IMG/VR virus record: IMGVR_UViG_3300023184_004198 | Span: 148,615 to 212,614 of that record | Length of the DNA: 64,000 nucleotides | Reading direction: 5' to 3' (one strand) | Shown: one piece after another, positions 9,255 to 63,050 of the stretch | How positions within the stretch are numbered: the first letter of the stretch is position 1 | Layout: each line of letters opens with the position of its first letter | The notes under the pieces: model-generated | The model's input: the letters and a program-made list of their open reading frames with translations, nothing else | The model's database searches: none | What the model was told of the DNA's origin: nothing | Made by a program: the position numbers and the translations under genes

Positions 9255-9270
9255 CTAGATAAATATCTAC

Positions 9271-9819
9271 ATGGAACTGAGAGATCACATTAACCTAGTA
9301 GAGGCCAGTACTAGACCGGCCAAGTTGGAAACCACTCCCTTGCCTTATGGTCCCAAAGACTTGGCACCGGTGATGAGTGCTGACACAATTAATTATCATT
9401 TTGAACACTTGGCCAAGGGCTATGCAAAACGTTATAATGCTGGAGAAGGCAATGCAGATTTCAATCGTGCTGGCAGTTTTTTACACAATAAGTTTTTCCC
9501 TCAGCTTCGCGCTCCCAAAGGTGCCAACAGACCCCGTGGTGCTGTACTTGCCTTGATTGAAGAGCATTTCAAAACCTACGAAGACTTCAAAGAGGCTGTT
9601 AAAGAAAAGGCCATGAAGATACAGGGTTCAGGTTGGGTGTATTTGAGCACTGGTGGTGAAATCAAAACCATTGCCAACCATGCTGTGCGCACAGATATCT
9701 GTGTGCTCATTGACTGGTGGGAACACGCCTGGGCATTGGATTATCAAAGCGACAAAGAACGCTATCTAGATAACATCTGGAAAATAATAGATTGGGACGT
9801 CTGTAACGAACGTCTGTAA
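9271..9819 (+). CDS. sod: Fe/Mn superoxide dismutase with an extra N-terminal leader
   Basis: PLPY...LAP.MS..T..YH, FN..G..LH, QGSGW.YL, DWWEHA; all four metal-ligand positions present. Confidence 0.9.
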   Translation: MELRDHINLVEASTRPAKLETTPLPYGPKDLAPVMSADTINYHFEHLAKGYAKRYNAGEGNADFNRAGSFLHNKFFPQLRAPKGANRPRGAVLALIEEHFKTYEDFKEAVKEKAMKIQGSGWVYLSTGGEIKTIANHAVRTDICVLIDWWEHAWALDYQSDKERYLDNIWKIIDWDVCNERL

Positions 9820-9828
9820 GGAGTCGGC

Positions 9829-10092
9829 ATGTGGCAACTACTGTGGGTACTACTGCCCGTTGTGGCACATGCGGACATGAATGATTGTGTGAGAGAACCC
9901 AACCAGGATAAAAAGAATTATTGTATGGCTACTTACAGCGGGAGTGCCGCTTTTTGCGATCGAATACGAGGCTACGAATATCGAACACAATGCATGCGAA
10001 TGGTCATTGCCAAGCAACGAGAAGTCGCATATCAAACACCCAAACCACCCACAAAGGAAAAAAAGAATGAACCTGCAACCAGCGGCCATTAG
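9829..10092 (+). CDS. Small secreted Cys-containing protein
   Basis: Signal peptide ending AHA; four Cys; AAGGAG RBS. Confidence 0.7.
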
Positions 10093-10387
10093 CAAACTAA
10101 AAGAACTTGTTGCTGAAGAAGGCAACCCTGAACTAAAACTACGAGTATTTGTACAAGGTGGAGGATGTTCAGGATTCAGTTATGGTTTTACATTTGATGA
10201 AGCTCGAAACGAAGATGATTTTGATTTCTCTTACGACACTGTGCAAGTTGTTGTAGATGCCATGAGCATGCAGTATCTACAAGGATCAGAGATTGATTAC
10301 AAAGAAGATATGATGGGCGCCAGCTTTGTGATCAACAATCCGCAAGCAGTCAGCACTTGCGGATGTGGATCAAGTTTTAGCATTTAA
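10067..10387 (+). CDS. erpA: Iron-sulfur cluster insertion protein, ErpA/IscA (HesB) family
   Basis: [17 protein letters not shown]...[13 protein letters not shown]. Confidence 0.9.
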
Positions 10388-13161
10388 ACTGTTTCACCAT
10401 TTTCGCGGATGAACTCAGTGTCTCCGCCTACAATATCAAACACACGCATCCAGAAGCGTTCCACTGGTCGGAATATCCAACCCCAGCGGTTTTCGCCGTA
10501 ATAGTATTTGCCATAGCATACCAAGGGATCTGCAAAAGTCTTTGTGACCAAGAACTTGAACACACGTGACTCACGCATGAGTGGCACCAGTACTTCTGCC
10601 AGTCGGTAGTAGCCTCTGCGGTTTCGACCAGTCATCTTCTCATCACGGTATCTGCGTACCACTGAATCCATGGTGCCATCACCGTAGCGAGCTTCAAGCA
10701 TGATGAAGCAGCAACCACCACCACCACCGCCGCCGCCACCTGCACTGCAACCACTGCCGGCTGAACTGCTGCAACTGCCTGCACTGCCGTCGCCACCAAA
10801 TCCTGTTTGTCCCTTGTTATGAACCACAAGGTTGTTGGCTATGTAAGTGTTGTTGCCATCTAGTTTGAAATTATAGATTACTTGTTGTTGATCTTGATCG
10901 CTGTATTCTTCAATTGAGTCGATTACAACCCCCACGCCGTCTTCAGTTTCGACTACATCGCCCACGGCATATTTGCCCACGGTCATTTTATACTTGGCGT
11001 AGGTCATTACAGGGTCAAAAGATCGCCAACCATGGCCACGTATCCATACTGGGTGATCGCTGGTCATAAATGGTGTGCTGCCGTTGAATGCCATCATGGT
11101 GGCACCGGTTTCGCCCAAAGTGGGTCGCAAAAACTCCAGCACGGTGTTGTGTGCGCCATCCATACCCAGCACAACTTCCCCTAGCGCAACATCTTCGATA
11201 TTTTTGCGTGAACCGTCGGCCATGGTAATTTGTGTACCAGCCACAAAGCAACAACAAATACGAACAGTGTCATACACTTTTGGTGGGGGAGGAGGCAACG
11301 CTCTCAAATCCGGGGGTCTAGATACTCTGGCCCAATCATCTGATTGAGATATAAAATAGGGCACAAAAGTTCCAACCACCGGTTCCCATACCCCAGCTTC
11401 GTTTACATACATGCCGTCAATTTGTTTCCACTCGCCATCTACATTAACAAAAATAGTTTTAACTTCTTGCCAACCGCCGGCAGTTCTCACTCTAGGACCA
11501 AAACTGTTGAATATGAACACAGCGCCACCGTTGCCACCTTGCACCGAACCTGGCAGTCCACCTTGTCCTACTCCGGGCAACAGGTTATGATATGGACCAG
11601 TAAAAGCCACACCCGCACCATTGGGACTTAATGCTGTGCCAGTGGCAATTGGATTTAGATAACTTACTCCTACACCACCGGCTTGTCCGTAAGCATCACC
11701 TTCGCTACTGTAACCATTTTTTCCAGCGCCGCCAGGACCGCCAGGACCGCCTGCCCCTCCACCGCCACCATCTTTGTAGAAATCGCCTTGATTTTGGCCA
11801 ACTTGTCCATTGGAAATTCCAGCGGCAGTCTGTCCACGTGGTCCTGGTGCATTGGATTCAGAAATACCAGTATCACTGTTGCCAGCACCACCGCCACCAG
11901 CGCCACCTACTGCAACTGCTATCAATGTTTCATTTGGTGTTTGTGGATTTAGTACCAATGTGGTACAACCGCCAGACCCACCACCACCACCTGAACTGCC
12001 CACAGGACCTGCCAGTCCACCAGTGGCGCCTGACCAACTTTTACTAATGACAATGGCCACACCTGCACTTGGCAAAGCTGTTTGACTAAATGAAGCAAAG
12101 AATGAAATTGTGTGATAGCCTTGACTTACTGTAACATTTGTAGTGTATGCTGTGCTGTATGAATCAGAACCCGGTGTGGTATACACCACAACACCATCAA
12201 TGCTGAGTGTGGCTGTGTTGGCAGCAGCCATCTCAACTTGATAAGACCCAGTGTAAGGAAAATACACATTGGCATAGGTTCTAGCGCATGAACTGGCTTT
12301 GAAATTTTGTTCCCACATACCAAAGTCCAACATCAAATTGCTGTAAATATTGTCAGGCTCTGTGTCAGGATTTGGCACGTATAAAGGCGGACTGGCTACA
12401 GCACTTCTAGTATCAAATACATTTCTCACCAAACCATATCCACCCAACCCTGCATTGCCAGTTGTGGCTATGGTAAGTCCTACTCCAAATACGCCGTATG
12501 TGGCTCCAACATTGGCATTGGCAAGAATACGTATGGTATGATTACCCGGAGTTATAGTGCGTACAAATTGCACACCGCCTGACTCTTGTGTCTTCCAACT
12601 GTCAACACCGGATTCCAACAATACTTCGCCGTCAAGAAAAACTGTGGCTTGGTAATACGCTGCTAATCTAAAAACATAAGTGATAGAAAAAGGAAAAAAT
12701 ACAGTAAATGATTGATCAAAGTTTAAAGTATTGGCTAAACTGGTGGTACTGCCATCCAATGCTGTGCCAGTGTTCCACACACCAGTGTCATTCAAAAATT
12801 TTGACCAGCGAGCAACCGTGGTAGCACTGGCACGAGGCAGTGCTGTGGTTCTTCCAATAGGAACAGCGGTGCGTGTGTTAAAAATACTGTCTTCGTAAGA
12901 ATTGGCTATGCTACTGTTTCGGCCACTGCCACCAGCAGCGCCCACTGCAATCTCAATCACATCACCAGGATTAACAGTAAACGACGCTGATACATATCCA
13001 CCACCAGAGCCTGAGCCACCTTGACGACTCCCGTCGCTGCCGCCGGAACCTCCGCCTGCACCCCAGAGATAAGCCTGTACAGTTTGTGAATATCCGGCAG
13101 CAGGCAAAGTCAGGGTTTGCCGAGCGTTGATCATGCTCAAAGGTCTAATTAGTGTGGTCAT
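10384..13161 (-). CDS. Gly-rich tail fibre/adhesin with Hint domain and CFI-box-like C-terminus
   Basis: WGAGGG Gly-rich domain, PA14-like segments, CFVAGT...VHN Hint, CCFI...RRYRD...YY tail. Confidence 0.8.
10816..11250 (-). other. Hint (bacterial intein-like) autoprocessing domain, ~145 aa
   Basis: Block [14 protein letters not shown], block B TSDHP, blocks [21 protein letters not shown]; the +1 residue is K. Confidence 0.85.
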
Positions 13162-13164
13162 TGT

Positions 13165-14562: not shown

Positions 14563-14630
14563 TGACCGCTCCGATTGTCAGTATTTAGCGGCACGCAAAG
14601 TTTTGGTAAATACTCAACTGGAACACAAAC

Positions 14631-16820
14631 ATGGCACAAGAAATTATCAACATCGGAGCAGTGGCCAACGACGGCGCTGGAGATCCTTTACGCACTGCGT
14701 TTACCAAAACCAACAACAACTTCAGTCAGTTGTTTGCAGCAGGTGGCGTGTCAGGTATTTCAAACGGCACTAGTAATATCAACATATTAAACAGTGGTGC
14801 TATATTGATGAGCCCACAAGGCGTGGCCAATGTGATCACTGTCACTGCAACTGGCGCTACTGTTACAGGAACACTGATTGGAAACACCACAATCAGTGCC
14901 GTGGGCAACGTTTTAGCAGGTCAGTTTTTCATTGGCAATGGATCACAACTTACTGGTGTTGTGTCTGTGGCTGCTGCGGCTCTGATTACCGGAAACACAT
15001 TGAGTTCTAACGTTGTAACCAGCAGTTTGACCACAGTGGGCACATTGGGTACGCTCAGTGTCACTGGTAATATTCGCGGTGGCAATATCAATACTCCTGG
15101 TGCAGTAGTTGCATCAGGTGATGTTTCTGGCACAAATGTCAATGCAGGCAGCAATGTTAACGCTTCAGGCAATGTCACTGGTGGAAATGTAATAGTTGTA
15201 GCAGATGTATCAGCAGGTGGTGTTGTCAGTGCTGTGGGCAATGTCAGTGGCGCATATTTCATTGGCAATGGATCACAACTATCAGGTATTTCTGTAAGCT
15301 CTAATGCAGCATTATTGACTTATACCACATTGAGTAGTAATGTTACAGACAGTAGTCTGCGACAACTTGGTACATTGAATTATTTAAATGTTGGAAATGC
15401 ATTAGGTGGCAATGGTGCCATCAACTCCAACAGTATTTCTGCTGGAACAACCATTGTGGCCACCGGCAACATCACTGGTGGTAACATCAACACTGGAGGC
15501 ATAGTCACCGCCACAGGGAATATTAATTCAGGTGCAATTATTTCTGCATTTGGCAACATTGCCACAGCAGCCAATATCTCAGGAGGCAATTTAAATATTG
15601 CTACTCAAATTTTCAGTGCTGGAGACATCAACGCTGTTGGTAATATTACAGGCGGTAATGTCAACACCGGTGGCGAATTGTTTGCTGCTGGCAATGTTTA
15701 TGGCGCCAATATTCAAGGTGGTGCCAATGTATTTGCTACATTGCACACAGGAACCACAGTGTCAATGACTGGTAATATACGTGGTGGTAACCTGATCACA
15801 GCCGGTTTGGCCAATGTAGCAGGACGAGTAGAAGCTGGCAACATTTTAACTTATGGTACAGTTACTGCTATTGGCAACGTCACAGCACCAAACTTCATAG
15901 GCAATGTTGTTGGTAATATCACTGGTACATTGTCTGCACCAGGATCCAATACACAAGTGGTGTTTAACGATTCTGGTACAGCCAATGCCAATGCAAGTTT
16001 AACATTCAACAAGACCACTGGAGCACTCACAGCCAATGGTACTATAACAGGCGGCAATATTAACACAGCAGGCACACTCAGTGTTGGTGGTAGCACCATT
16101 ATTGCTGGCAACTTGACAGTGAGTGGCACAACTGAATATACCAACGTTTCCACTTTGGCCATACAAGATCCTATCATCAGCATAGGTCGTGGTGCCAACA
16201 ATGCTGCGCTGTTGAGCAGTGACGGCAAAGATCGCGGCGAACAATTGTATTATTTTAGTTCTGCTGAGCGATCGGCGTTTATTGGTTATCAAGCCAGCTC
16301 AGGCAAATTGATAGCAGCAGTACAAACTACCATTACCAACGAAGTTGTAACAGTCAACAGTTATGGAACCATTGTGGTTGGCACAGTAGAAGGCACAGCA
16401 CTCAATGTCACCGGCAATGTACAAGGTGGCAATGTGATATCCAATGCTCTGGTGCAAGGTGCAAGCCTCAGCGTTACTGGTAACACCGCCACAGTCACAA
16501 GTGCCAATTATCAAATTGGCTACAGAGACTTGCCGCAGATTACCACATTCAGCACTTTGGTTGCAGATGCCGGTGGCAAACATTACTACGGTTCGGGCAC
16601 TATTACTATCCCTGCCAGTGGTACACTGAATTTTGCTGTGGGCACTGCTATCTTGATTATTGCTAGTAACAGCACTACCATTGCTAATGCCGCTGGTGTC
16701 ACACTGATTCAAGCCGGCACTGGATCCACAGGATCAAGAACTTTGGCACAATACGGTGAGGCCAGCTTGGTCAAAGTGGCCACAGATACCTGGTACATAT
16801 CAGGCGTAGGAATAAGTTAA
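14631..16820 (+). CDS. Tail fibre / baseplate-attached fibre
   Basis: N-terminal INIG..ANDG.GDPLR.AF.K.N.NF (T4 gp9/gp10-like); many GN(I/V)xGGN repeats. Confidence 0.8.
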   Translation: MAQEIINIGAVANDGAGDPLRTAFTKTNNNFSQLFAAGGVSGISNGTSNINILNSGAILMSPQGVANVITVTATGATVTGTLIGNTTISAVGNVLAGQFFIGNGSQLTGVVSVAAAALITGNTLSSNVVTSSLTTVGTLGTLSVTGNIRGGNINTPGAVVASGDVSGTNVNAGSNVNASGNVTGGNVIVVADVSAGGVVSAVGNVSGAYFIGNGSQLSGISVSSNAALLTYTTLSSNVTDSSLRQLGTLNYLNVGNALGGNGAINSNSISAGTTIVATGNITGGNINTGGIVTATGNINSGAIISAFGNIATAANISGGNLNIATQIFSAGDINAVGNITGGNVNTGGELFAAGNVYGANIQGGANVFATLHTGTTVSMTGNIRGGNLITAGLANVAGRVEAGNILTYGTVTAIGNVTAPNFIGNVVGNITGTLSAPGSNTQVVFNDSGTANANASLTFNKTTGALTANGTITGGNINTAGTLSVGGSTIIAGNLTVSGTTEYTNVSTLAIQDPIISIGRGANNAALLSSDGKDRGEQLYYFSSAERSAFIGYQASSGKLIAAVQTTITNEVVTVNSYGTIVVGTVEGTALNVTGNVQGGNVISNALVQGASLSVTGNTATVTSANYQIGYRDLPQITTFSTLVADAGGKHYYGSGTITIPASGTLNFAVGTAILIIASNSTTIANAAGVTLIQAGTGSTGSRTLAQYGEASLVKVATDTWYISGVGIS

Positions 16821-17359: not shown

Positions 17360-17394
17360 CGTCACAATAAATATGTCAAAGGCTTAATAACAAC

Positions 17395-20300
17395 ATGGCA
17401 CAACCTGTTTGGATCACCCCCGCTGGAAGCCTAGGCATCATACCTGAAGGCATATTTTATCAAAACAGCATGCGGGCCTACGATCCTGATCCTGCACCAG
17501 GCACAGATCTGTATTATCGAGTCATATCAGGTACCTTGCCAGCCGGAATTCAATGCAGTGTCACTGGTTTAATTGCCGGCGTACCTCAGGCTGTGGCCAG
17601 TTTGCAAGGTGTACCACAACCAGTTAATCGCAACGAAACCAGCAAATTTACTCTGCGTGCCTACACTGAAAATGAAGCCACTGGGCAAATTTTGCGCATT
17701 GCGGATCGTACATTTACTCTCACAGTCAGTGGCAATGACATACCTGAATTTACCACGCCTATTGGATCATTCACCGCTAGTAATACTGCACAGTTTGTGG
17801 GTGCAATTTCCGGCACAGAACTCACTGTAAGTTCTATTACATCAGGCACATTGAGCAATGGCATGGTTTTGCGCGGAACCAATATTGTTCCTGGAACAAC
17901 CATTGTTGACACAGGAACAGCCAATGGCGGCACAGGCAAATACACTGTAAATATCAGTCAAACCAATTTAGGTACAACAATCACCGGCTGGATAGGCACC
18001 TATTACGACGGAGACCTTGTTGATCTAACATTTGGGTATACCAGTTTGGATCCCGACGAAACTATCACAGTCAGGCTGGTGTCAGGTGAATTACCATTGG
18101 GGCTGACACTCAGTACTTCAGGGCGTTTGTATGGATACATAGAACCTGCTGCCAATGTAAACAAAACTCCAGGTTACGACGAAACACAAATTGACACAGT
18201 GCCTTATGACTTTGTAGTGTCTGCTATCAACAAAAATTATCAATTCACACTAGAAGTCACTGATGGGAAAAGCAGTAGTCTAAGAACATTTACAATTTAT
18301 GTTTACAACAAAAGTGATCTCACAGCAGACAATTCAATAGTAACAGGGGACAACACATTTGTCACAACTGATCAAATTGTGGATCGAAATCCATTCTTGG
18401 TCAATGCTGAGCCCAGTTATCTTGGTCGTGTGCGTTCTGACAACTATTTTGCCTATCAATTCAGGGCCAATGACTACGACACTGTGGATCTCACATATTC
18501 AATTGAAGTCAATCAAGGTGAGGGTCTTCCACCAGGATTAACACTGGATCCCACAACTGGTTGGTACTACGGATACATTCCAGATCAGGGACTGTTGGAA
18601 GTTACCTACAGTTTCAACATCACGGTAAGTCAAACTGACAATCCCACAATTACCAGTCAGCCATATCCTTTTACCTTGACCATTGTGGGCATTACCGACA
18701 GTGAATGTACTTGGATAACAGATTCAGATCTTGGTGTACTGGAAAATGGTGCCACAAGTTTGCTCAAAGTTGAAGCCATCAATCGTGGCAACAAACCACT
18801 GAGTTACAGATTAAAGAGTGGTGCATTCAATGAGTTACCACAGGGACTGACATTGTTGCCATCGGGAGAAATTGCCGGACGAGCAACATTCAACACGTTT
18901 TCAGTGGACTTGGGATTTACCACATTTGATAAATCACAAAGCAACATCACCGGTATTAGTGAAACCACGTTTGACAGCTCATACACGTTTACTGTAAACG
19001 CTTATGCTGAGGATCCCAGCCAAGATGTTTACAATGTGGCCAGTGTCACTGTGACCAATGGTGGTTCAGGCTACAGCGGCATCAATTTACCTACATTGGA
19101 ATTTTCAGCACCAATTGGTGCTGATGCAGAGCGAGCACAAGGAACGGCAGTGGTTTCAGGAGGTCAAATAGTTGCGGTTAATGTGACCAATCAAGGTGCT
19201 GGTTACTACAGTCAACCCACACTGACAGTGACTCAAGGATTTGGTGGATCAGGTGCTGTGCTTACGCCGGTGATACAACCCTATGGCGCCAGAGATGCTA
19301 TCTCAGTGTTCAAAACTTTCACTATCAGAGTATTCAGAGCTTACAACTATCCATATCAAAACTTGTATGTGGTGGCCATGCCGCCTGTAAATGACCGTGT
19401 ACTGTTGGATCAACTGCTGACTAATCAAGAAATTTTTGTACCTGAATACATTTATCGCCCAGACGATGCCAACTTTGGTGTCAGTACCGCGGTAAAATAC
19501 GAGCATGCATATGGATTAGCACCTGAAACAATCGACACTTACGTGGCTAGTTTGTATCTGAATCATTATTGGAAGAATTTGATCTTAGGATCAATTGAAA
19601 CAGCCCAGGCATTGGATGCCAATGGCAACGTGGTGTATGAAGTTGTTTACAGTAAAATTGTTGATGACCTTGTAAATTCAGCCGGAGAAAGTGTGAGCAA
19701 AATTGTAAATTTGCCATATTCCATAACTGATCCTGCAGATGGCAGCACAGAAATCACACAGGTGTATCCCAACAGTCTTGTGAACATGCGAGATCAAGTT
19801 ATTGACGTTGTGGGACAAATCAGCACAAAACTACCACTGTGGATGACTTCAAAACAAACCAATGGTCGTGTGTTGGGCTTTACCCCTGCTTGGGTGATAT
19901 GTTATGCCAATCCTGGGCGATCAAAACAGATTGCTTATTATATTTCTGAATATTTTGCTCAACAATTAAACAGTGTAGATTTCAAAGTTGATAGGTATGT
20001 GCTAGACCGTACATTGAGCAAAAATTGGAATACCGAAACACAACAATGGACTCCCACAGGAAGTCTTACCACATTTGACTACTATAATACCACTGGATAT
20101 GTTGACATTGGTCTAGTGGAATGTGCTACCAATCTAGCCTATGACGACATCAATTACAGAACCCTGGACGAAATAAATGCCTTGGGCGGCATAGATGGAC
20201 TGACCTGGATCGATGATGGTGGTGTAGCACCATTTGGCACCAAGGTAGTAATCAGAGATGGTACACGAATTATTTTTGTCAAACAAGAAGGATATTTCAA

Positions 20301-22750: not shown

Positions 22751-22780
22751 TTGACTTTCATCAGCGGTCTGCTGTATAAT
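22751..22780 (+). promoter_or_regulatory. Sigma70-type promoter, probably giving a leaderless transcript
   Basis: TTGACT-N18-TATAAT; ATG 5 nt downstream. Confidence 0.7.
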
Positions 22781-22785
22781 ATACT

Positions 22786-23022
22786 ATGGAACATCCGCTG
22801 ATAGGCCCACTTGATGAATTAACGCTGGAAGAACTCGGCGCCAAAGTCAACGAACTGGGTAAAAAATTGGGCATTGCTGCCCGCACTGGAAATGGCCATT
22901 TGTGTAATCAAATACGCATGGCCATGGAAAACTATCAAAACATGTATCAAACCCGGTTGCAAGAGAGTTATAAAAAAGCTCAAGGTGACTCAAACTTCGA
23001 CGACAAAATAAACATCCAATGA
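22786..23022 (+). CDS. Hypothetical protein
   Basis: 78 aa, helical. Confidence 0.7.
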   Translation: MEHPLIGPLDELTLEELGAKVNELGKKLGIAARTGNGHLCNQIRMAMENYQNMYQTRLQESYKKAQGDSNFDDKINIQ

Positions 23023-23621: not shown

Positions 23622-24123
23622 TCAATACGGCGAAATTATATATAACGAAAGTGATCTTGTGAACATGATCATGAGTGGCGCTACTATAGATGGCTTGAAA
23701 GGCATGCTGGTTGAGTCAGGCGTGAATTTAGAAACAGCGTCAGCATATTTAGAGCAGGTGCCGGAACTAATTGAATACTCATTTACAGACATGACTGTGG
23801 AAGAGTTTGATGTAATGAAACAGAACTCCTGGCACATGCCTGAAGAGTACAAACAGTTGGACATTGCCGAATATGTGTTGAGCCTGTGCGACTCAGATGC
23901 TCGACTGCAACGCTGTGGTCAAGAACTGTTGTTGTTTCAAGAACGCAACTTGTTTGATTTGTTGCGTTATCTCAAATATCTTGTGGATACGTTGACAGCC
24001 AACCACATGATTTGGGGAGTAGGACGTGGGTCCAGTGTGGCCAGTTACGTGTTGTACTTGTTGGGTGTGCATAGAATTGACAGTATGTTCTATGATTTAG
24101 ATCCCACAGAGTTCTTGCGTTAA
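23611..24123 (+). CDS. DNA polymerase III alpha (DnaE)-like fragment
   Basis: WGVGRGSSVASYVLYLLGV.RID...Y.L....FL; ends before the catalytic PDxDxD. Confidence 0.8.
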   Translation: MKTNQYGEIIYNESDLVNMIMSGATIDGLKGMLVESGVNLETASAYLEQVPELIEYSFTDMTVEEFDVMKQNSWHMPEEYKQLDIAEYVLSLCDSDARLQRCGQELLLFQERNLFDLLRYLKYLVDTLTANHMIWGVGRGSSVASYVLYLLGVHRIDSMFYDLDPTEFLR

Positions 24124-24144
24124 ATAGAGTTTTAGGAGAAAGAC

Positions 24145-24372
24145 ATGACCAAAGAAGTATACAAAAGTGCTCGTGGCAAACCTGTGGACATGGGAGCATT
24201 GCGTTTAAAAAATGAAAAAGAACGTGCAGTAGGCAATATGAAAGTGAATGCTCGTGGTGACGCTGTGGATGAAGGCAATCACCCAGTTCAAAGCCGACCA
24301 CAACAGGTGCATAAACAATATCAACAACAGATTCAAGCAAAAACTTCTTCACACAAATGGGATTTAGATTAA
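24145..24372 (+). CDS. Hypothetical protein
   Basis: AGGAG RBS; YKSARGK.VDM...AVGNMKVNARGD. Confidence 0.7.
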   Translation: MTKEVYKSARGKPVDMGALRLKNEKERAVGNMKVNARGDAVDEGNHPVQSRPQQVHKQYQQQIQAKTSSHKWDLD

Positions 24373-28427: not shown

Positions 28428-28593
28428 GTGTGATTCTCCTAAGCCCTGTAGGGCCAGGTATTTACGGTCAGCATTTTGATGATAACGGAGTGGTATTCTT
28501 TAATTCTTGGTCACTAAATACTGACCAGGCCGCAAAAAGCACACAGGCCTAAGTCTATTGTGCGCTCACAACAACTTTGGTAAATAATGCATT

Positions 28594-43798: not shown

Positions 43799-43804
43799 TA
43801 TACT

Positions 43805-44784: not shown

Positions 44785-44799
44785 CGCTAAATACAGTTT

Positions 44800-46128
44800 A
44801 TGACAACTGTAGTAATCATGCCCGGTGGGTTTCACCCTTTTCATGCAGGACATTTGGCCCTGTATCAATCAGCGCAACGAGCCTTCCCTGGCGCCGACGT
44901 GTATGTTGCTGCCACTGATGATACCAGCACACGCCCGTTTCCCTTTCAAGTCAAAGAAAAACTAGCACAGTTGGCCGGGGTTGACCGTGGCAGATTCATG
45001 CGTGTCAAAAGCCCATTCCAGGCTGCAGAAATCACAGCACCATACAATCCCCAAAAAGATCAGTTGATATTTGTTCGCAGTGAAAAAGACGCAGACAAAC
45101 CACCACGAGCCGGTGGAGTTAAAAAGAACAGCGAGCCATCATACTTGCAACCATTGCTGGGTGCAAAAAAACTAGAACCATTTGCAAAACATGCTTACAT
45201 GGCCTACTTGCCCACAGTGGAGTTTGGTCCAGGTATGACTTCGGCCACAGAGATACGTGCTGCTTGGCCTAAATTGGATGAGCGTAGAAAAACTGCATTG
45301 GTAATGAGCTTGTATCCAAAAACACAGGCCAATCCTAAATTGGCCGCTAATGTGGTCAAAATGTTAGACAACGCTATTGGCACAGAAGTTGCTGAAAATC
45401 AAGGCTGGGCAGCCACTTACGAGTCGGACGGCATCACTGCTGGTACCGGCGTGACTGGTGGCATGCACGCCACATATCAAGATAGATACAACCAACCTGT
45501 GGACGAAGCCAAGTTGCATTTTACTGATCCCACAATCCGAGTCAACTTGTACTATGTTCCGCCAAAACTACAGCATCAAGGCAAAGTGCAGAATGTAGCT
45601 CACAATATTCCTTACTCAACTGTGCAACCATTGATTGATAGACTGATGCAAAAATATCCCAACATGCATCCTGAATATCTAGTTGTGGGACCAACAGACA
45701 AAAATCAGTATGGTCAACGACTAAAAGAACAAGAGCAGTTGTCTGGAACAATTAAAGCAATACCCAAAGACGACTCAGAATATGATTGGGACTATTACTA
45801 CAAAGATCAACAGATTCAACCGGGCACAGACATACATTCAAAGATAAAAGATTTGCACATGAGTCAAAAATATCCTGAGTATAATGCTCTGAAATCAGCA
45901 TTTGAAAAACCTTATACCTCAGGCAAAGTAATACCGCCTGAACAGTGGCCAGAAAATCAACCATCGCAGGATCGTGTTGTGCCAAACTTTTCGGATGTTG
46001 GAGGCCCTGATTATACCATTCCCAAGCAGTTTATTAAAGATCCAGAAGGTAAACCCATCAGGCTCAAAGACTTTTTACCGCATGATCCAGACATGAACGA
46101 AGACTACATTGAAGAATGTCGGTCGTAA
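44800..46128 (+). CDS. HIGH-motif nucleotidyl/cytidyltransferase-like protein with accessory C-terminal modules
   Basis: PGGFHPFHAGH; SATEIR; C-terminal modules separated by xxE linkers. Confidence 0.75.
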   Translation: MTTVVIMPGGFHPFHAGHLALYQSAQRAFPGADVYVAATDDTSTRPFPFQVKEKLAQLAGVDRGRFMRVKSPFQAAEITAPYNPQKDQLIFVRSEKDADKPPRAGGVKKNSEPSYLQPLLGAKKLEPFAKHAYMAYLPTVEFGPGMTSATEIRAAWPKLDERRKTALVMSLYPKTQANPKLAANVVKMLDNAIGTEVAENQGWAATYESDGITAGTGVTGGMHATYQDRYNQPVDEAKLHFTDPTIRVNLYYVPPKLQHQGKVQNVAHNIPYSTVQPLIDRLMQKYPNMHPEYLVVGPTDKNQYGQRLKEQEQLSGTIKAIPKDDSEYDWDYYYKDQQIQPGTDIHSKIKDLHMSQKYPEYNALKSAFEKPYTSGKVIPPEQWPENQPSQDRVVPNFSDVGGPDYTIPKQFIKDPEGKPIRLKDFLPHDPDMNEDYIEECRS

Positions 46129-46186
46129 AAAATAACACCCGCTGTTATAATCTTTAAATACTAACATAATTTTTAACGGAGAACCC

Positions 46187-47125
46187 ATGTCAGACCAAGC
46201 ACCGGTGACTACCACGCCACCAACCGATCCTGCCCAAACCAATCAGCAAAACATTCAAGTAAACATTGACTATTTGCGTACCACACGAGTGCATATTTGT
46301 ATGCCTTGTTATGGTGGACAACTAACAGAACAAACTTTTATGAGTTTTGTGAAATGGGCCAACCTATGTCGTCAACTCAACATTGACTGGACAGTGGAAA
46401 CCATGACCAATGAAAGTCTGATCAGCCGAGCACGTAATACACTTACCGCTAAATTTTTATACACCAAAGAGTCAACACATTTGATGTTTATTGACGCTGA
46501 CATTGGTTGGGAACCTTGGCACCTGTTGGTCATGCTGGATGCACAAAAAGATGTAATCGGCGGATTGTACCCTATGAAGAGCTTGCCGGTCAAATGGTGT
46601 GTGAATGGCATTCCTGGACAAGTGGAAGAGCCTGGTGCTAACTTGATCGAAGTTACCAAAACCGGCACAGGTTTCTTGTTGATCAAGCGTGATGTGTTTG
46701 AAAAGTTAAATGCACACCCTGCCACCAAGCCGTTCAACAACGACATTGGCTTGCCTGTGGAACTCAACCCTTATATGAAAACCTACTTTGACACTGCTGT
46801 GCGTGAGAACCGCTACTACAGTGAAGATTGGACTTTCTGCGAAAACTGGCGCGACATTGGTGGACAAGTATGGGTGGACAAACGTATCCTGTTGCGTCAC
46901 GTGGGCACTTACACATTTGACTATGCCACACACGAACAACTGTACAAGGACCTTAAACAGATGTTTGAACCCAGTGCAGTAACAGTTACACCTGTGTCAC
47001 AGCCAGAACAAATCACTGGCAAACCTGCTGAAGGACACGATCTAGCCAAAGAACCGCCGCCTGTGCCTGAACCCACAGTGATGGCATCCAGCAAAAAGAG
47101 CAAGAAACCAGCAACTGTTGAGTAA
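46187..47125 (+). CDS. GT-A (GT2-like) glycosyltransferase
   Basis: PCYGG, ESLISRARN, FIDADI, GTGFLLIKR, SEDW.FC, L.HVG. Confidence 0.8.
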   Translation: MSDQAPVTTTPPTDPAQTNQQNIQVNIDYLRTTRVHICMPCYGGQLTEQTFMSFVKWANLCRQLNIDWTVETMTNESLISRARNTLTAKFLYTKESTHLMFIDADIGWEPWHLLVMLDAQKDVIGGLYPMKSLPVKWCVNGIPGQVEEPGANLIEVTKTGTGFLLIKRDVFEKLNAHPATKPFNNDIGLPVELNPYMKTYFDTAVRENRYYSEDWTFCENWRDIGGQVWVDKRILLRHVGTYTFDYATHEQLYKDLKQMFEPSAVTVTPVSQPEQITGKPAEGHDLAKEPPPVPEPTVMASSKKSKKPATVE

Positions 47126-47142
47126 CGGTAAATATAGTTCGT

Positions 47143-50100
47143 ATGAACATCAACGAACTAGACTCCTATAATCTTGCAGACGCAGTAAAATTTCACCGCC
47201 GTCTCAATCCCAGAATCTGGGGGCGAGACGAGCACTTGCTGCCTGAAGTGCGTGAAAAATTACTGGCCATTGCTGCGGATTTTCAAGAATTCCTGGGCGT
47301 GGATGATCTCAACGTTCAAGACATCACTATATCAGGCTCAAATGCAGCCTATTCATATACAAAAAATTCAGACATTGACCTGCATCTTGTGGTTGAGATG
47401 CCTGATGATCCTGTGTATCAGGAACTGTTCAACGCTAAAAAATATCAATACAACGACGAGCACAATATAAAGATTGGTGGTGCGGATGTAGAGTTATATG
47501 TACAGCCTAGTGATCAAGCACATCACAGCCAAGGCATTTATTCAATTCAAGACAACCAATGGTTGCAGGTACCTCAACGCAAACGTGCTCAAATAGATGA
47601 TGCGTGTGTGCGTGACAAGGTTGCAGACCTGGATGCCAGAATTCACGCTGCCGTCAAAAGCAAAAATATCGACGCTGTGACCACATTGTGGAACAAGATC
47701 AAAACCATGCGTCAAGCGGGACTCGAACAACATGGTGAGTTTGGCTGTGAAAACATTGCTTTCAAAATGTTGCGCAACAGCGGCTGCATTGGTGCGTTGA
47801 AAGATGCTAAAACAGCACTGCAAGATCGTGAACTCAGTCTGCATGAAGAGCCACGAAAGAGATTTCGTTATGGGTATGGTTCGACAATGGTTGAAGCATC
47901 TACTCCTGATGGAGTCAGTCCTACCACTCAAATGTTTTTGAATGAAGATGACGAGATTGAAACCAAAGTACGTGACTTCATCCAACATGTGACCACAGAA
48001 CTGGGTATTGACCCCATGCCAGAAATTCACTTGCACACTGATCCCGAATGGAGTGTACACAATCACAGTTTTGGTCGTTACGACCCTGACAGTCATACTT
48101 TGAATGTCAGCATGCCCAACCGCCACATCCTGGATGTGTTGCGTACAGTGGCACATGAACTGGTGCATTGCAGTCAAAACCAACAACATGGGCACTTGCC
48201 CGACGATGCAGGTGAAACTGGCAGTCGCTGGGAAAATGATGCCAATGCTCGTGCAGGTATCATCATGCGCGACTGGGCCAACGCACACCCAGAAGATTTT
48301 GAACAAGCACCCTTGGCAGAAAATGCTTCGGGCTATATTCCCAAGAACAAACGAGAAGCAGCCCGGCCACAGTATGCCATGGCACTGAGTGTGGATATCA
48401 AACCTGGGCAGGTGGGCAAAGAAGCCAACAAGTTGGCATTGAAAACTGGACGCAATGGTGAGCCAGGCTTGCTACAACCTGATGCACAAAACTTGTTGCG
48501 TGAGTTTGCAGAATTCGCAGAAGAACAAGAAAACTTGTTTGAAATAACCATGAGCCCCTCAAGTCTGCGCAAATTGAGTGCGCAAACTGGTGCCTTGGCC
48601 GGCATGGAATTTGAAATGTGTGTGCCCAACGTCGAAGGCAACGACGACGGTGATCAAGAACCTGACTATGACTATGATGAACGCTGCCGTAGCATTGAAG
48701 ATGCTGTGCAATTTTTCTATGATGGTGATTGGAACGGTCGTAGAGACGTAGAACGCATGCGTGAAAGAATGCAGAGTGATTTCAGTGATTGGCTGATGGA
48801 CAAGGTCTATCAAGACTGGGAACGCCATGGCGAGGAATATCTGGAAGAATGGGTGCCCAACAACGTGGACGAATCTGAGTGGAATCCTGAAGGCCTGGAA
48901 GGTGAGGCTCGTCAAGAAGCACTAGAAGAATACATCGCTGCTATGCATGCCGATGCCGGCAGCAGTGGTGATGCGTTTGATGAGTACAGAGAAGAAAATC
49001 AAGAGTCATATGACGAAAGTGACTGGTTGGATGACGAAGACCTAGACCGCATGAGTAGTATTGAAAATGCCTACTCAATGAACTGGCCGCACTGGACCAA
49101 CCCCGGCCGTGGCGAAACCAGCATTGAAGATATTGCTGACAGTTTTAGAGACGCAGTGGGCCGCCCAATACTAGCCAGCACCAGTTATCACAGCAGCCGA
49201 GTTGAACGACCCAGCACCAAAAACTTGGAATACATTGTAGAACCTGACAGCAGTATTGATGTTGATGACAACGACGATCGAGGCCTGGAGTTTGTAAGCC
49301 CGCCCTTGCCTATAGAAGAACTGCTGAGTGATTTGAACAAGGTCAAAGCCTGGGCTGATCGTACTGGTTGTTATACCAACGATTCAACCGGCCTGCATAT
49401 CAACGTGTCAGTACCTGGCTGGTCCGGCGACCTCAGTCAATTGGACTATGTAAAACTGGCCCTGTTGCTGGGCGATGAGCATGTGTTGGAATCTTTTGGA
49501 CGTGCTGGCAATACCTATTGCAAGTCAGCCATGGGCAAGATACAAAAAGCAGTGAAACAAAATCCTGACAAGGCAGAAGAACTGTTGGAACGCATGCGAC
49601 AGGGCATGGATCAACTGGCCAGCAAGGCCATACACTCAGGCGTCACAGACAAATACACATCAATCAACCCCAAAAATGGCTACATTGAATTCCGTTCACC
49701 CGGGGGCGATTGGTTGAATGATAACTTCAAAGAAATCGACAACACCCTGCGTAGATTCACAGTGGCCCTGAGTGCAGCCGTGGATCCTAAAGCGTATCGC
49801 CAAGAATATCTAAAGAAACTGTACAAATTGTTGGATGTTCACAGTGAAAAAGATCCCTTATCATACTTTGCAAAATTTGCCGCAGGCGAGTTGCCCAAGG
49901 CAGCACTGAAAAGTTTTGTGCGTCAAGCACAGTTAGAACGTGGTGTCAAGCGTGGCAAAGAAACAGGCCCAATGTGGTGGCGGGTGTACAAAGAAGGCAA
50001 AAATGCTGCCAACGGTGCCGTAATCGAAGTTGTGGCTTCTAGCCGAGAAGAAGCATTAGACAAAGCCGCCGAAGAATGGGGTGTGTTTAGCAACGAATAC

Positions 50101-53020: not shown

Positions 53021-53596
53021 GTGCAACAACATGAATTCACTGCTGAAGCCAGCCCGGACACATTGTCAGGTAGTTTTACTCCAGATCTTGTGAGCAGCAA
53101 GACTTGGTTGTGTAATCAACTCAAAAAACAACTGGGCGATACCAGTGCTGGCGACATCTATATCTTGGGCTCATGGTACGGCAACCTGGGCATATTTTTA
53201 CAGCAGGCCAACATTGACTTTGATCGCTTGATCATGGTAGAAACTCGTCCACGCTTGTTGGCCACAGCACGCCGACTGCTAGAACCACTATATCAAGCGG
53301 GGCAACTAAAGTTGGTGCTGGGTCGTGCTGAACAAATTGAGTATCCACGCAAAAACTTCACAGTGATCAACACCAGCGCCAACGACATGAGTCGTAGTTG
53401 GATAACTAGAGTACCCCTGGGCACTCTTACTGTGATACAATCACGTGACAATGTCAAAGACGTCAAGGTCATTACAGACACAGCAGCACAGTTTTATGCC
53501 AAGTTTCCCCTGGAAAACACTGTGTATTGGGGGCAACGCAGACTGCGTGATCCAGAAACACGCTACACACGCTTCATGAAGATTGGCTATAAATAA
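53021..53596 (+). CDS. Rossmann/methyltransferase-like protein with leader
   Basis: SK.WL, ILGSWYG, INTS, RFM.IG; GTG start. Confidence 0.65.
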   Translation: MQQHEFTAEASPDTLSGSFTPDLVSSKTWLCNQLKKQLGDTSAGDIYILGSWYGNLGIFLQQANIDFDRLIMVETRPRLLATARRLLEPLYQAGQLKLVLGRAEQIEYPRKNFTVINTSANDMSRSWITRVPLGTLTVIQSRDNVKDVKVITDTAAQFYAKFPLENTVYWGQRRLRDPETRYTRFMKIGYK

Positions 53597-53602
53597 ACAA
53601 TC

Positions 53603-53956
53603 ATGAAGTACAGAGAAATTCTTGAAGCCTGCTGGACTGGTTATCGCCAAGCAGGCATGAAAAACAAAGGTGGTCGCCAGGTGCCCAATTGTGTACCAGT
53701 GCATGAAGCTGAACTGGAAGAAAATCTCCGTGACTGGTTCAAAGAAAAATGGGTGCGTTTTGGGCCTGATGGCAAAATTCGCGGCGATTGTGCCAGAGGA
53801 TCAGAATCGGAGGGCAAGCCCAAGTGTTTGCCCCAGGCCAAAGCACATGCCTTGGGCAAAAAAGGTCGTGCAAGTGCAGCGGCTCGCAAGCGCAGAGAAG
53901 ATCCCAACCCCAACCGTACAGGAAAGGCCATCAACGTGGCCACTAAAAAGAAATGA
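53603..53956 (+). CDS. Leader-bearing protein made of two basic Cys micro-domains
   Basis: MKYREILE|ACW.GY...VPNCVP; LEE|NLRDWFKEKWV...C...KPKCLP. Confidence 0.75.
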   Translation: MKYREILEACWTGYRQAGMKNKGGRQVPNCVPVHEAELEENLRDWFKEKWVRFGPDGKIRGDCARGSESEGKPKCLPQAKAHALGKKGRASAAARKRREDPNPNRTGKAINVATKKK

Positions 53957-61711: not shown

Positions 61712-61718
61712 ACGTTCC

Positions 61719-62708
61719 TTAGGTAATTGAGCAACTGTTGACACATTGATACAGCCTGCCGTCAGCAATGCTGCTTCTGGACCAGGTCTGTTCCACACGA
61801 TCAAACCACTCCAAGCAATGCGCCAAATCATATTTAAGTGCGTTGTTTTCTTGCACCAATTCTTTTGTCTGTGAATTGCCAGCATGATTCATAGTGTCAG
61901 GATAAAAACCCAGGTAACAACAAGGATATACTGAACCGTCAGCGGCTAGGTATATTTCCTTTTTGAGCTTGTGTTGACAACGTAGTTTTAACTCTGGTGT
62001 GTCTTTGTGCGACTGTACAGTGTGCGGATCAAACCATGTGATGTGACTTTGTAATAGGTCTTTTATGAGTGGCACATGTCCGCTGGGGTCTGTGCCAATC
62101 CTGTGACTGTATTCTCCTGACCTAGTGAACACTGGTCCAGAATCTCTGCCATCGTAGATGTTTTCAAACGCCGCAAATCCCATGTCCTGGGCCAGTTGTT
62201 GACATTGTTGTTCTTGATGCCTGTTATGATCAAACGGAACAAAACGCCATACTGCACGGCCACCTGCGCCAATAAACGCCTGTGCATTGGCTGTGACTCG
62301 GTTCCAATCAGTGTCTTGTCTGTACAAGGCATGAGTATCTGCCAGTCCATCCAAGGCAAATCCCACTGTAACTCCAGGCAAGGCCAGTCTGCGCCACCAG
62401 TCTTGATTGCGTAAACTACCATTGGTGTTGATGTTTATTTTGATACTGTGCGCAACAAGGTACTCGACTATTTCCACAGCGTCACGAGCACTTGCAAAGT
62501 CTCCCAGGTTGCCGTTGAAATTGGCATGTGTTAATTGTGAAATTACGGGACCGACAATGTGTTGAAATTGTGCCAAACTCAGTTCTACATCAGGGTAACC
62601 AGAGTTGTAGTCCATGCCACGATAGTTGCGCATGCACATAGGGCAGCGAGCATTGCACCGGGTAGTGAGTTCCACGTGCACCTGGCGTATTTGATCTAAC
62701 TTTAGCAT
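61719..62708 (-). CDS. Radical SAM protein with Twitch/SPASM-like C-terminus
   Basis: [27 protein letters not shown]; TATAAATA-N4-ATG. Confidence 0.88.
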
Positions 62709-62712
62709 GGGA

Positions 62713-62740
62713 TATTTATAGGCTGCTATTTTGCTAAATA
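62713..62740. promoter_or_regulatory. Divergent pair of late-type promoters
   Basis: TATAAATA on - (62713-62720) and TAAATA on + (62735-62740), each 4 nt from an ATG. Confidence 0.65.
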
Positions 62741-62744
62741 CAAT

Positions 62745-63050
62745 ATGCAAACACATTTTGTCCGAGTTGAATGCGATGTCACAGCCAAGGTACATGGTCA
62801 GCCACTGCGTTACCGAGCTTATGTAAACAATGAACTGTTTGTTGAACGCACCTGGATCTGGACTGACTGCTATTTGGAAGAGTCATTTCAAATCCAAGCC
62901 GGACCGGGAGTGTATCCCATACGATTTGAAACTGTGGACGAAGCCAATGGTCGCATCAAAGTGCGCAATCACAGAATTGTAACAGGCCCAGGCAGAATAA
63001 TAGAGTATCAAGGCGAACCAAGTTTGGAGATATCAGATGCAAGTACGTGA
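62745..63050 (+). CDS. Hypothetical protein
   Basis: YR.YVN.ELF.ERTWIW; 101 aa. Confidence 0.7.

What the first reader, a model, noticed from the sequence alone, without database searches (positions are those of the whole stretch)
9260..62745. TAAATA late-promoter motif 4-8 nt before ATG: a leaderless late-gene programme in a phage carrying IF-1
TAAATA (core of the T4 gp55 promoter TATAAATA) lies just upstream of start codons lacking a Shine-Dalgarno: 9271 (5 nt), 28594 (7), 34687 (5), 39182 on - (5), 43805 (7), 44800 (6), 47143 (8), 53603 (7), 62708 on - (4), 62745 (4). Other copies give longer leaders, often with an SD (14631, 17395, 24145, 32452, 39268, 46187, phoH). The short spacing puts the transcription start at or near the AUG. 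Systematic leaderless translation together with a phage IF-1 could shift ribosomes away from host mRNA or resist anti-SD/RNase defences.
Basis: partly seen in the sequence, partly recalled or inferred. Interest (0 to 1): 0.6.

Follow-up and report, generated by a model that had tools for sequence, protein, structure and literature searches.

The report
Late promoter boxes abutting start codons
In this uncultured freshwater huge phage and two relatives, a six-base T4-like late-promoter box sits either 4-8 bases before an ATG with no ribosome-binding site or 15-31 bases before one with such a site, so about half of the late-type genes are probably made from leaderless messages, although no RNA data exist to prove it.

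Summary
In the whole 212.6-kb record, TAAATA lies within 15 nt upstream of 21 called starts against 0.7 expected. It is the only non-Shine-Dalgarno hexamer enriched there.

The spacing is bimodal:
- 4-8 nt: always ATG, never an SD.
- 15-31 nt: usually with an SD.

Two related IMG/VR contigs (about 72% and 55% protein identity) show the same pattern independently. Orthologous genes keep the box while the flanks diverge. TAAATA is concentrated in non-coding DNA and is rare antisense to genes. The box precedes tail sheath, tail fibre, virion, holin and spanin genes. The nearest cultured relatives use host RNA polymerase with a gp55-like late sigma and have a predicted ATAAATA late box.

Best reading: a T4-type late promoter whose short-spaced copies put +1 at or next to the AUG.

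What is not shown:
- No transcription start sites are mapped, because no RNA run holds the phage.
- No gp55-like sigma was found, but the record is 61% complete and lacks the replication module.

A few sigma70-type -10 boxes also abut ATGs, so the leaderless layout is not only late. IF-1 is real (window 8419-8637). Its link to leaderless translation is speculation.

The parts
9260..9273 (+). TAAATA box (9260-9265), 5 nt, then the ATG of a Fe/Mn superoxide dismutase-like gene (9271-9819). Short-spaced class.
   Evidence: PF02777, 77 bits. The box is kept at 5, 5 and 4 nt in G000, G002 and G003.
28581..28596 (+). TAAATA box, 7 nt, then the ATG of a virion structural protein gene (28594-29205). 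It is the first gene after a divergent junction.
   Evidence: (phrog_12928, 5e-30).
34676..34689 (+). TAAATA box, 5 nt, then the ATG of an Rz-like spanin gene (34687-35145).
   Evidence: (phrog_2536, phrog_4952).
39180..39193 (-). TAAATA box on the minus strand (39188-39193; part of the palindrome 39188-39197), 5 nt, then the ATG at 39182 of a 46-aa membrane-type ORF (39042-39182).
   Evidence: 44% identical counterpart in G002, E 5e-7. This is the weakest gene call of the set.
43792..43807 (+). TAAATA box, 7 nt, then the ATG of a 54-aa gene (43805-43969).
   Evidence: spacing 7, 7, 7 and 8 nt in four genomes.
44788..44802 (+). TAAATA box, 6 nt, then the ATG of a 442-aa gene with an N-terminal nucleotidyltransferase HxGH motif (44800-46128).
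   Evidence: (spacing 6, 6, 6 and 4 nt).
47129..47145 (+). TAAATA box, 8 nt, then the ATG of a 1638-aa gene with a ParB-like domain (47143-52059).
   Evidence: spacing 8, 6, 6 and 6 nt. In the most diverged relative an intrinsic terminator lies just upstream of the box.
53590..53605 (+). TAAATA box, 7 nt, then the ATG of a 117-aa gene (53603-53956).
   Evidence: kept at 7 nt in G002.
62706..62747 (.). A 36-bp divergent intergenic region with two back-to-back boxes. The minus-strand box (62713-62718) lies 4 nt before the ATG at 62708 of a radical-SAM gene (61719-62708). The plus-strand box (62735-62740) lies 4 nt before the ATG at 62745 of a 101-aa gene.
   Evidence: (phrog_21308).
14582..14633 (.). 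Divergent pair of long-spaced boxes. The minus-strand box (14582-14587) lies 19 nt before the tail-fibre gene 13165-14562. The plus-strand box (14607-14612) lies 18 nt before gene 14631-16820.
   Evidence: both kept at 19 and 18 nt in G002; tail fibre families.
17368..17397 (+). Long-spaced box, 21 nt before the 1276-aa tail-fibre-like gene (17395-21225).
24121..24147 (+). Long-spaced box, 18 nt before gene 24145-24372, with an AGGAG SD.
   Evidence: kept in G002 and G003.
28425..28464 (-). Long-spaced box on the minus strand (28459-28464), 31 nt before the phoH-like gene 27693-28427, with an SD.
32415..32454 (+). Long-spaced box, 31 nt before gene 32452-33147, with an AAGGAG SD.
37864..37895 (+). 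Long-spaced box, 23 nt before gene 37893-38726.
39244..39270 (+). Long-spaced box, 18 nt before the holin-like gene 39268-39702, with an AAGGAG SD.
   Evidence: phrog_3427, holin.
46155..46189 (+). Long-spaced box, 26 nt before gene 46187-47125, with an SD.
   Evidence: kept in four genomes.
8419..8637 (+). Phage translation initiation factor IF-1 gene (72 aa).
   Evidence: (PF01176, 74.9 bits against a cut-off of 30.2). Conserved in G002 (92%) and G003 (65%).
22775..22788 (+). Host-type extended -10 box (TGTATAAT), 5 nt before the ATG of gene 22786-23022. It is an example of the leaderless layout with the other promoter class.

Best explanation
TAAATA is the -10-type recognition box of this phage lineage's late promoter class. 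It corresponds to the core of the T4 late box TATAAATA, which gp55-type late sigma factors read on host RNA polymerase. There is no -35 element.

By analogy with T4, where the box spans -13 to -6, transcription should start about six bases after the box. Two gene layouts follow.
- About 20-23 genes in this record, ten of them in the window, have the box 4-8 nt before an ATG. The message then begins at the A of the AUG or 1-3 nt before it. It carries no Shine-Dalgarno sequence and must be translated by the leaderless route, with a 70S ribosome or 30S-IF2-fMet-tRNA binding a 5'-terminal AUG.
- About 27 genes have the box 15-36 nt upstream, with the bulk of the class at 15-31 nt. This gives a 10-26 nt leader whose first bases are often the SD itself.

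Leaders of 4-9 nt, too short for an SD and too long for leaderless initiation, are almost absent.

What is shown: motif enrichment, strand bias, bimodal spacing, absence of an SD, ATG-only starts, conservation in relatives, and late functions downstream. What is inferred: the promoter function, the start-site position, the sigma factor and the translation route.
For: - Enrichment and bimodal spacing.
- Absence of an SD and exclusive ATG use in the short class.
- True N-termini of the short-class genes.
- Concentration in non-coding DNA and the lowest antisense-to-CDS count of the 15 anagrams, as expected for a promoter and not for an RNA motif.
- Eight short-spaced genes head divergent units, with intergenic gaps as small as 24 and 36 bp, so a promoter must sit there.
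- Intrinsic terminators lie 5-21 nt upstream of the box in several cases, followed by an ATG 5-8 nt after it.
- Two relatives show the same two spacing modes independently (12 and 10 short-spaced genes against 0.3 expected, all ATG). The combined histogram has 41 genes at 4-8 nt, 4 at 9-14 nt, and the bulk of the rest at 15-31 nt.
- Orthologues keep the box while the flanks diverge, and two genes switch between the SD-led and the abutting layout.
- Genes downstream of the box include tail sheath, tail fibres, virion proteins, holin and spanin.
- The nearest cultured relatives (PA5oct, Atu_ph07, Rak2-like/CBB, SCTP-2) all carry a gp55-like late sigma.
- PA5oct depends on host RNA polymerase (PMC7318152).
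- An ATAAATA late box was predicted for CBB and GAP32 (PMC5259590).
- The T4 box lies at -13 to -6 (PMC2988020).
- In Deinococcus, -10 boxes 6-7 bp before ORFs give leaderless mRNAs (PMC12340547).
- Host-type TATAAT boxes abut ATGs at the same 5-7 nt in a few genes. This is independent support that the geometry is a -10-to-+1 distance.
Against: - No 5' ends are mapped. All 20 public runs that hold the phage are DNA.
- No gp55-like sigma, sigma70 domain or T4-type clamp was found in the record or in two relatives. The profile used does detect T4 gp55.
- The upstream TA of the T4 octamer is not conserved here.
- Fourteen short-spaced genes lie only 4-17 nt (in one case overlapping by 4 nt) from a same-strand upstream gene. 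They could also be translated from read-through transcripts by re-initiation.
- T4 and PA5oct show no excess of the short spacing, so there is no experimental precedent within the group.
Confidence: 0.65

Rival explanations
1. The box is a late promoter, but the short-spaced genes are translated mainly from longer read-through transcripts. Translation would start by termination-reinitiation or 70S scanning across the 4-17 nt gaps. The leaderless transcripts would then be minor or non-productive.
For: Fourteen of 22 short-spaced genes follow a same-strand gene at 4-17 nt or overlap it by 4 nt. In a relative, the IF-1 stop codon is part of the box of the next gene. A review states that IF1 strongly stimulates 70S scanning (PMC9031893).
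Against: Eight short-spaced genes head divergent units or follow terminators, where no read-through is possible. Coupling does not explain why the box, rather than any AT-rich sequence, sits at a fixed 4-8 nt. It also does not explain why starts are ATG only.
Confidence: 0.15
2. TAAATA acts at the RNA level. It could be an A/U-rich translational enhancer (an S1-binding site) or a cleavage site for a phage or host endoribonuclease that trims messages close to the AUG. It would not be a promoter.
For: The motif is A/U-rich and strand-specific. No sigma factor for it was found. The T4 review warns that some mapped late 5' ends could be processing products (PMC2988020).
Against: An RNA motif gives no reason for the lowest antisense-to-CDS count among the anagrams. 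It would not be needed at the heads of divergent units, where a promoter is otherwise missing. An enhancer 15-31 nt upstream and separated from the ATG by a normal SD is hard to rationalise. The near absence of 9-14 nt spacings fits a fixed 5' end, not a binding site.
Confidence: 0.1
3. The box is read by the host primary sigma as a weak -10 element, and the leaderless layout simply mirrors the host's own gene organisation. On this reading there is no phage-specific late programme.
For: Host-type TGCTATAAT boxes abut ATGs at 5-7 nt in a few genes. In Deinococcus-Thermus a -10 box alone next to an ORF is enough for expression (PMC12340547).
Against: TAAATA lacks the conserved final T of TANNNT in any register. 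It has no TG extension and no -35 element. The two box types precede different gene sets: small early-looking genes with strong SDs against structural and lysis genes.
Confidence: 0.07
4. The pattern is a compositional or annotation artefact: stop codons plus AT-rich spacers, or mis-called starts.
For: Some boxes overlap the TAA stop of the upstream gene. Gene calls come from a home-made caller.
Against: P values of 1e-12 to 1e-24 in three genomes. Anagram controls. Boxes at divergent junctions with no upstream stop. N-terminal domain motifs fix the starts.
Confidence: 0.02

Closest known systems
Bacteriophage T4 late promoters (TATAAATA read by gp55, with gp33 and the gp45 clamp)
   Same: Same A/T-rich core TAAATA at the -10 position. 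There is no -35 element, and the boxes face either way, including divergent pairs. They precede structural and lysis genes. Relatives of this phage carry gp55 homologues.
   Different: Only six bases are fixed here, and the first two T4 positions vary. A C three bases upstream is common. T4 shows no excess of boxes 4-8 nt before an ATG. Neither a sigma nor a clamp was found in this incomplete record.
Predicted ATAAATA late box of Rak2-like jumbo phages (CBB, GAP32)
   Same: Same phage group by tail sheath similarity. A near-identical motif precedes structural genes, and a gp55-like sigma is present (PMC5259590).
   Different: It is a MEME prediction only. The passages retrieved from the CBB paper report no spacing analysis and no leaderless layout.
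-10 boxes adjacent to ORFs in Deinococcus-Thermus (leaderless mRNA genes)
   Same: A -10 element typically 6-7 bp before the start codon. There is no SD, and the box alone suffices as a promoter (PMC12340547).
   Different: There the box is the host TANNNT read by the primary sigma. It serves a third of cellular genes and is not a phage late class.
Thermus phage phiYS40 middle and late transcripts, and lambda cI from pRM
   Same: These are phage genes expressed from leaderless messages. This rests on my own knowledge of Sevostyanova et al. 2007, and on PMC10491246 as listed. The AR9 paper remarks that phage transcripts are often leaderless.
   Different: phiYS40 uses host-type extended -10 promoters in a host phylum rich in leaderless genes. 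Here the box is the T4-type late element in a T4-related huge phage.
Translation genes of huge phages (IF1, IF3, S1, S21)
   Same: The IF-1 gene is of the kind reported for many huge phages and proposed to redirect initiation (PMC7162821).
   Different: The passages retrieved from that paper relate S1 carriage to weak SD usage and do not mention leaderless genes. Here SD-led and SD-less genes coexist.

Membership tests
T4-type late promoter | A/T-rich -10-type box with the core TAAATA and no conserved -35 element | tested here: met
   The core is invariant by construction of the search. No conserved position lies further upstream, except a C three bases before the box in 45-67% of copies. Enrichment upstream of starts has P 6e-24.
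T4-type late promoter | The full 8-bp consensus TATAAATA | tested here: not met
   The two positions before TAAATA are near-random. Only about 3 of 22 short-spaced copies carry TA there.
T4-type late promoter | Drives late (virion and lysis) genes | tested here: met
   Tail sheath, tail fibres, virion structural proteins, holin and Rz-like spanin lie downstream of boxes. Auxiliary enzymes (SOD, radical SAM, nucleotidyltransferases) do too. Timing itself is not measured.
T4-type late promoter | The phage encodes a gp55-like late sigma | tested here: inconclusive
   No match in G000, G002 or G003 with phrog_234, phrog_12791, tblastn or a custom HMM that finds T4 gp55 at 1.8e-14. The record is 61% complete and lacks the DNA polymerase module. 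All cultured relatives have this sigma.
T4-type late promoter | gp33 co-activator and gp45 sliding clamp | tested here: inconclusive
   A gp44-like clamp loader is present at window 24983-25906 (phrog_168, 2e-81). No clamp (phrog_223) and no gp33 (tblastn) were detected in the incomplete records.
T4-type late promoter | Transcription starts about 6 nt downstream of the box | not testable with these tools
   No RNA run holds the phage.
Leaderless-mRNA genes | A -10 element at a -10-to-+1 distance from the start codon | tested here: met
   Spacing is 4-8 nt for 41 genes in three genomes, with peaks at 4, 5 and 7 nt. Host-type TATAAT boxes show the same 5-7 nt spacing in a few genes.
Leaderless-mRNA genes | AUG start codon and no Shine-Dalgarno sequence | tested here: met
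   All 19, 12 and 10 short-spaced genes start with ATG. None has anti-SD pairing of -4 kcal/mol or better.
Leaderless-mRNA genes | Primary 5' end of the message at or within a few bases of the AUG | not testable with these tools
   No RNA data.
Bacterial initiation factor IF-1 (PF01176) | S1-like OB-fold domain scoring above the Pfam gathering threshold, about 72 aa long | tested here: met
   74.9-75.9 bits against a cut-off of 30.2. It is 56-65% identical to IF-1 of many phyla.

The most novel reading that the evidence does not exclude
The lineage runs a two-tier late translation programme. Abundant virion proteins keep SD leaders, while about 20 or more accessory late genes are leaderless. 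The phage IF-1, perhaps with other factors in the missing third of the genome, would shift host ribosomes towards 5'-terminal AUGs and 70S-type initiation late in infection. Phage messages would then gain an advantage over host SD-led messages, or become insensitive to attacks on the SD/anti-SD interaction.
Probability: 0.12. Interest if true: 0.8.

Novelty: new variant of a known kind. Interest (0 to 1): 0.55.

Why it matters
T4-type late promoters and leaderless messages are each well known. A T4-related huge phage that places its late box directly against the start codon of nearly half of its late-type genes has not been described in the papers I could search. Two relatives conserve this layout, and individual genes toggle between it and an SD-led layout.

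If start-site mapping confirms it, there are three consequences:
- It gives a simple sequence rule for annotating starts and late genes in uncultured huge phages.
- It shows that leaderless expression can be a regulated viral gene class outside the Deinococcus-Thermus and actinobacterial world.
- It offers a concrete substrate set for testing what phage-encoded initiation factors do.

Tried and rejected
- RNA evidence: the look-up of sequencing runs returned only DNA metagenomes from lakes, freshwater and a few marine sites, in 9 studies. Read laying was therefore not used, because contigs cannot show 5' ends.
- Near relatives among GenBank phages: none by megablast.
- Late sigma: searched with phrog_234 and phrog_12791, Pfam sigma70 regions 2 and 4, tblastn with T4 gp55, gp33, gp45 and dsbA and the PA5oct sigma, and an HMM of four jumbo-phage late sigmas run without filters on all six-frame ORFs. 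Nothing was found.
- One weak gp55 tblastn hit (E 0.005) proved to be a spurious antisense ORF inside a metallophosphoesterase gene.
- Eighty IMG/VR loci encoding late sigmas were fetched to find the missing part of this lineage. None shares more than one conserved gene with it.
- T4-type clamp: not found.
- Host inference from IF-1 failed. It is about equally similar (56-65%) to IF-1 of many phyla.
- A phiKZ-like reading was considered because of the 'virion structural protein' PHROG labels. It was rejected: tail sheath relatives are PA5oct, Atu_ph07 and Rak2-like phages, which use host polymerase.
- The two copies at 1 nt spacing (genome 104242 and 137968) cannot serve those ATGs as leaderless promoters. 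They are left unexplained.

Full report
**What the sequence is.** The window is the last 64 kb of a 212,614-bp IMG/VR virus record. CheckV rates it 61% complete, which implies a genome of about 350 kb. GC content is 45%. It has no close relative among GenBank phages. Its tail sheath is 35-46% identical to those of Pseudomonas phage PA5oct, Agrobacterium phage Atu_ph07, Sinorhizobium phage Phosso, Vibrio phage 2.275.O, Salicola phage SCTP-2 and the Rak2-like phages such as CBB. These are the T4-related 'group 2.2' jumbo phages. They lack their own RNA polymerase and carry sigma factors and a gp33 homologue (PMC7824862). PA5oct is rifampicin-sensitive (PMC7318152). Near-identical DNA occurs in lake and freshwater metagenomes from nine studies. 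No RNA run holds it.

**Checking the observation.** I laid the whole record in the script box and called 274 genes with a dicodon model trained on its long ORFs.
- TAAATA is fully contained in -15..-1 of 21 starts against 0.70 expected (P 6e-24). It is the only hexamer in the top list that is not part of a Shine-Dalgarno sequence.
- It is also the top hexamer in -40..-16, with 25 genes against 1.4 expected.
- The distance from the end of the box to the start codon is bimodal: 4-8 nt for 19 genes and 13-36 nt for 27 genes, with the bulk of that long class at 15-31 nt.
- Four more genes join the short class once the start is read at an ATG that the caller skipped: window 34687, window 62708 on the minus strand, genome 44658 and genome 85121.
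- The 19 automatically called short-class genes start with ATG without exception. None pairs with the anti-SD at -4 kcal/mol or better. The median is +0.6 kcal/mol, which is worse than random sequence. By contrast, 70% of the long class do pair at that level.
- The ATGs are the real starts. Usually no in-frame start lies upstream. Domain-defining motifs begin within 5-25 residues: HxGH of nucleotidyltransferases, CxxxCxxC of radical-SAM enzymes, DxH of metallophosphoesterases and a signal peptide.

**Promoter or something else.** Several observations point to a DNA-level, strand-specific start signal.
- Among the 15 anagrams of the hexamer, TAAATA has the highest count in non-coding DNA (63 of 109) and the lowest count antisense to coding sequence (13; the others have 26-129). 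Avoidance on the antisense strand makes sense for a promoter and not for an RNA motif.
- Eight short-class genes are the first gene after a divergent junction, with gaps as small as 24 bp (genome 113030-113053) and 36 bp (window 62709-62744). The latter holds two back-to-back boxes, each 4 nt from its ATG.
- In several cases an intrinsic terminator lies 5-21 nt upstream of the box and the ATG follows 5-8 nt after it.
- Spacings of 9-14 nt are almost absent, with 4 genes against 41 at 4-8 nt in three genomes.
- In the shortest long-class leaders the SD begins 5-8 nt after the box.

This is the pattern expected if the box fixes the 5' end about six bases downstream. A leader of 4-9 nt can neither hold an SD nor serve leaderless initiation.

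**Conservation.** A protein search of IMG/VR gave four related contigs. I fetched two in full: G002 (146 kb, mean 72% protein identity) and G003 (130 kb, mean 55%).
- Each shows the same two spacing modes on its own: 12 and 10 short-class genes against 0.3 expected, all ATG.
- Orthologues keep the box while the flanks diverge. Gene 44800 has 6, 6, 6 and 4 nt. Gene 47143 has 8, 6, 6 and 6 nt. Gene 43805 has 7, 7, 7 and 8 nt. The SOD gene 9271 has 5, 5 and 4 nt.
- Two genes that are SD-led in this record (genome 74393 and 85557) have the box 7 nt from the ATG in G003. The lineage therefore toggles between the two layouts while keeping the box.
- Genes without a box almost never gain one in the relatives.

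**Which class of genes.** Genes downstream of boxes that have a recognisable function are late ones: tail sheath, several tail fibres, virion structural proteins, a holin and an Rz-like spanin. The short class also holds auxiliary enzymes. These are a Fe/Mn superoxide dismutase, nucleotidyltransferases, radical-SAM proteins, metallophosphoesterases, a nuclease and a 1638-aa ParB-domain protein. A second promoter class, TTGAC-N17-TGCTATAAT, precedes mainly small genes with 20-30 nt leaders and strong AAGGAG sites. It looks like the host-type early class.

**Comparison with what is known.**
- T4 late promoters are an 8-bp TATA box at -13 to -6 with no -35 element, read by gp55 with gp33 and the gp45 clamp. 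Variants are known in T4 relatives (PMC2988020).
- An ATAAATA box before structural genes was predicted for CBB and GAP32, which also carry a gp55-like sigma (PMC5259590).
- If TAAATA sits at -11 to -6, +1 is the sixth base after it. A spacing of 5 nt puts the A of the ATG at +1, and 4-8 nt puts it within -1 to +4.
- The same geometry, a -10 box 6-7 bp before the ORF, defines leaderless genes in Deinococcus-Thermus (PMC12340547).
- T4 and PA5oct show no excess of TAAATA-N4-8-ATG over a reversed-pattern control (21 against 26, and 48 against 68). This record has 31 against 13. The layout is therefore a feature of this lineage and not of the whole group.

**What is missing.**
- I could not find the factor that reads the box. 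PHROG families for gp55, Pfam sigma70 regions, tblastn with T4 and PA5oct proteins, and an unfiltered HMM of four jumbo-phage late sigmas (which detects T4 gp55 at 1.8e-14) all gave nothing in G000, G002 or G003.
- The record lacks the DNA polymerase module, which appears in a part of G002 with no counterpart here.
- All cultured relatives have the late sigma, at 37-46% identity to one another. The likeliest reading is that the gene lies in the unsampled third of the genome.
- Eighty IMG/VR loci with late sigmas did not include this lineage.
- A gp44-like clamp loader is present in the window. No T4-type clamp was detected.

**A qualification to 'late programme'.** Host-type TATAAT boxes also abut ATGs at 5-7 nt in a few genes: 4 in this record against 0.36 expected, and 2 and 5 in the relatives. 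Window 22786 is an example. This supports the reading that the distance is a -10-to-+1 distance. It also means that leaderless expression is not confined to the late class, and that the host ribosome presumably handles such messages before any phage factor is made.

**IF-1.** The gene is real (window 8419-8637; PF01176, 75 bits). It is conserved in both relatives and lies just upstream of the short-class SOD gene. In G002 its stop codon is part of that gene's box. IF-1 genes are common in huge phages (PMC7162821). A review states that IF1 and IF2 stimulate leaderless translation in vitro and that IF1 strongly stimulates 70S scanning (PMC9031893). Nothing in the sequence ties this IF-1 to the leaderless genes, and the defence-evasion idea is untested.

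**Verdict.** The best explanation is a T4-type late promoter box that, in about half of its copies, is placed so that the message starts at the AUG. I hold the promoter reading at about 0.8 and the leaderless consequence at about 0.65. I hold a functional tie to IF-1 at about 0.1-0.15. It is a new variant of known kinds, and moderately interesting. Start-site mapping would settle it.

Noticed in passing
window 39941-39992 (upstream of the DnaJ-like gene 39990-40775): A host-type promoter (TTGACC, 17 bp, TATAAT) has its -10 box inside a 12-bp-stem hairpin (-17.6 kcal/mol) followed by a T-rich run that ends at the ATG. In the most diverged relative the stem sequence differs but still pairs. It may be a terminator that doubles as a promoter, or it may hide the SD on read-through transcripts.
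   Followed up: partly
window 9271-9819, 39990-40775 and 40852-43107; genome 111415-112244 (L014:11415-12244): The phage carries a set of proteostasis and stress genes: Fe/Mn superoxide dismutase, DnaJ, a ClpA/ClpB-type double AAA+ ATPase and, outside the window, Hsp20-like and ClpS-like ORFs. The last two are judged by eye from the translations.
   Followed up: partly
genome 135273, 147929 and 148296, and window 216-224 (TGCTATAAT copy at genome 148830): A nearly identical promoter-plus-leader cassette of about 45 bp (TGCTATAAT, a conserved leader, then AAGGAG) is repeated before several small ORFs. It looks like a duplicated early-gene expression module.
   Followed up: partly
window 39188-39197: The palindrome TATTTAAATA supplies a TAAATA box on both strands. 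The minus-strand copy serves the 46-aa membrane ORF at 39182. The plus-strand copy has no gene at a suitable distance.
   Followed up: no
window 26144-27118 and 61719-62708 (minus strand); genome 39515-40654: Three radical-SAM-type genes. Two match the same PHROG (phrog_21308). Two of the three belong to the short-spaced class.
   Followed up: no
window 23611-24123 and 24983-25906: A 170-aa protein matches a 'DNA polymerase' PHROG (phrog_11127), and a gp44-like clamp loader lies nearby. The main DNA polymerase is absent from the record and appears only in a relative's extra region.
   Followed up: partly
genome 104242 and 137968 (L014:4242 and L015:17968): Two TAAATA copies end 1 nt before an ATG start. 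That is too close for the box to act as a -10 element for those starts. They are unexplained.
   Followed up: no
window 46187-47125: All relatives align to this protein only from residue 23 onward, while the box and SD upstream are conserved. The N-terminal 22 residues are a variable extension.
   Followed up: no
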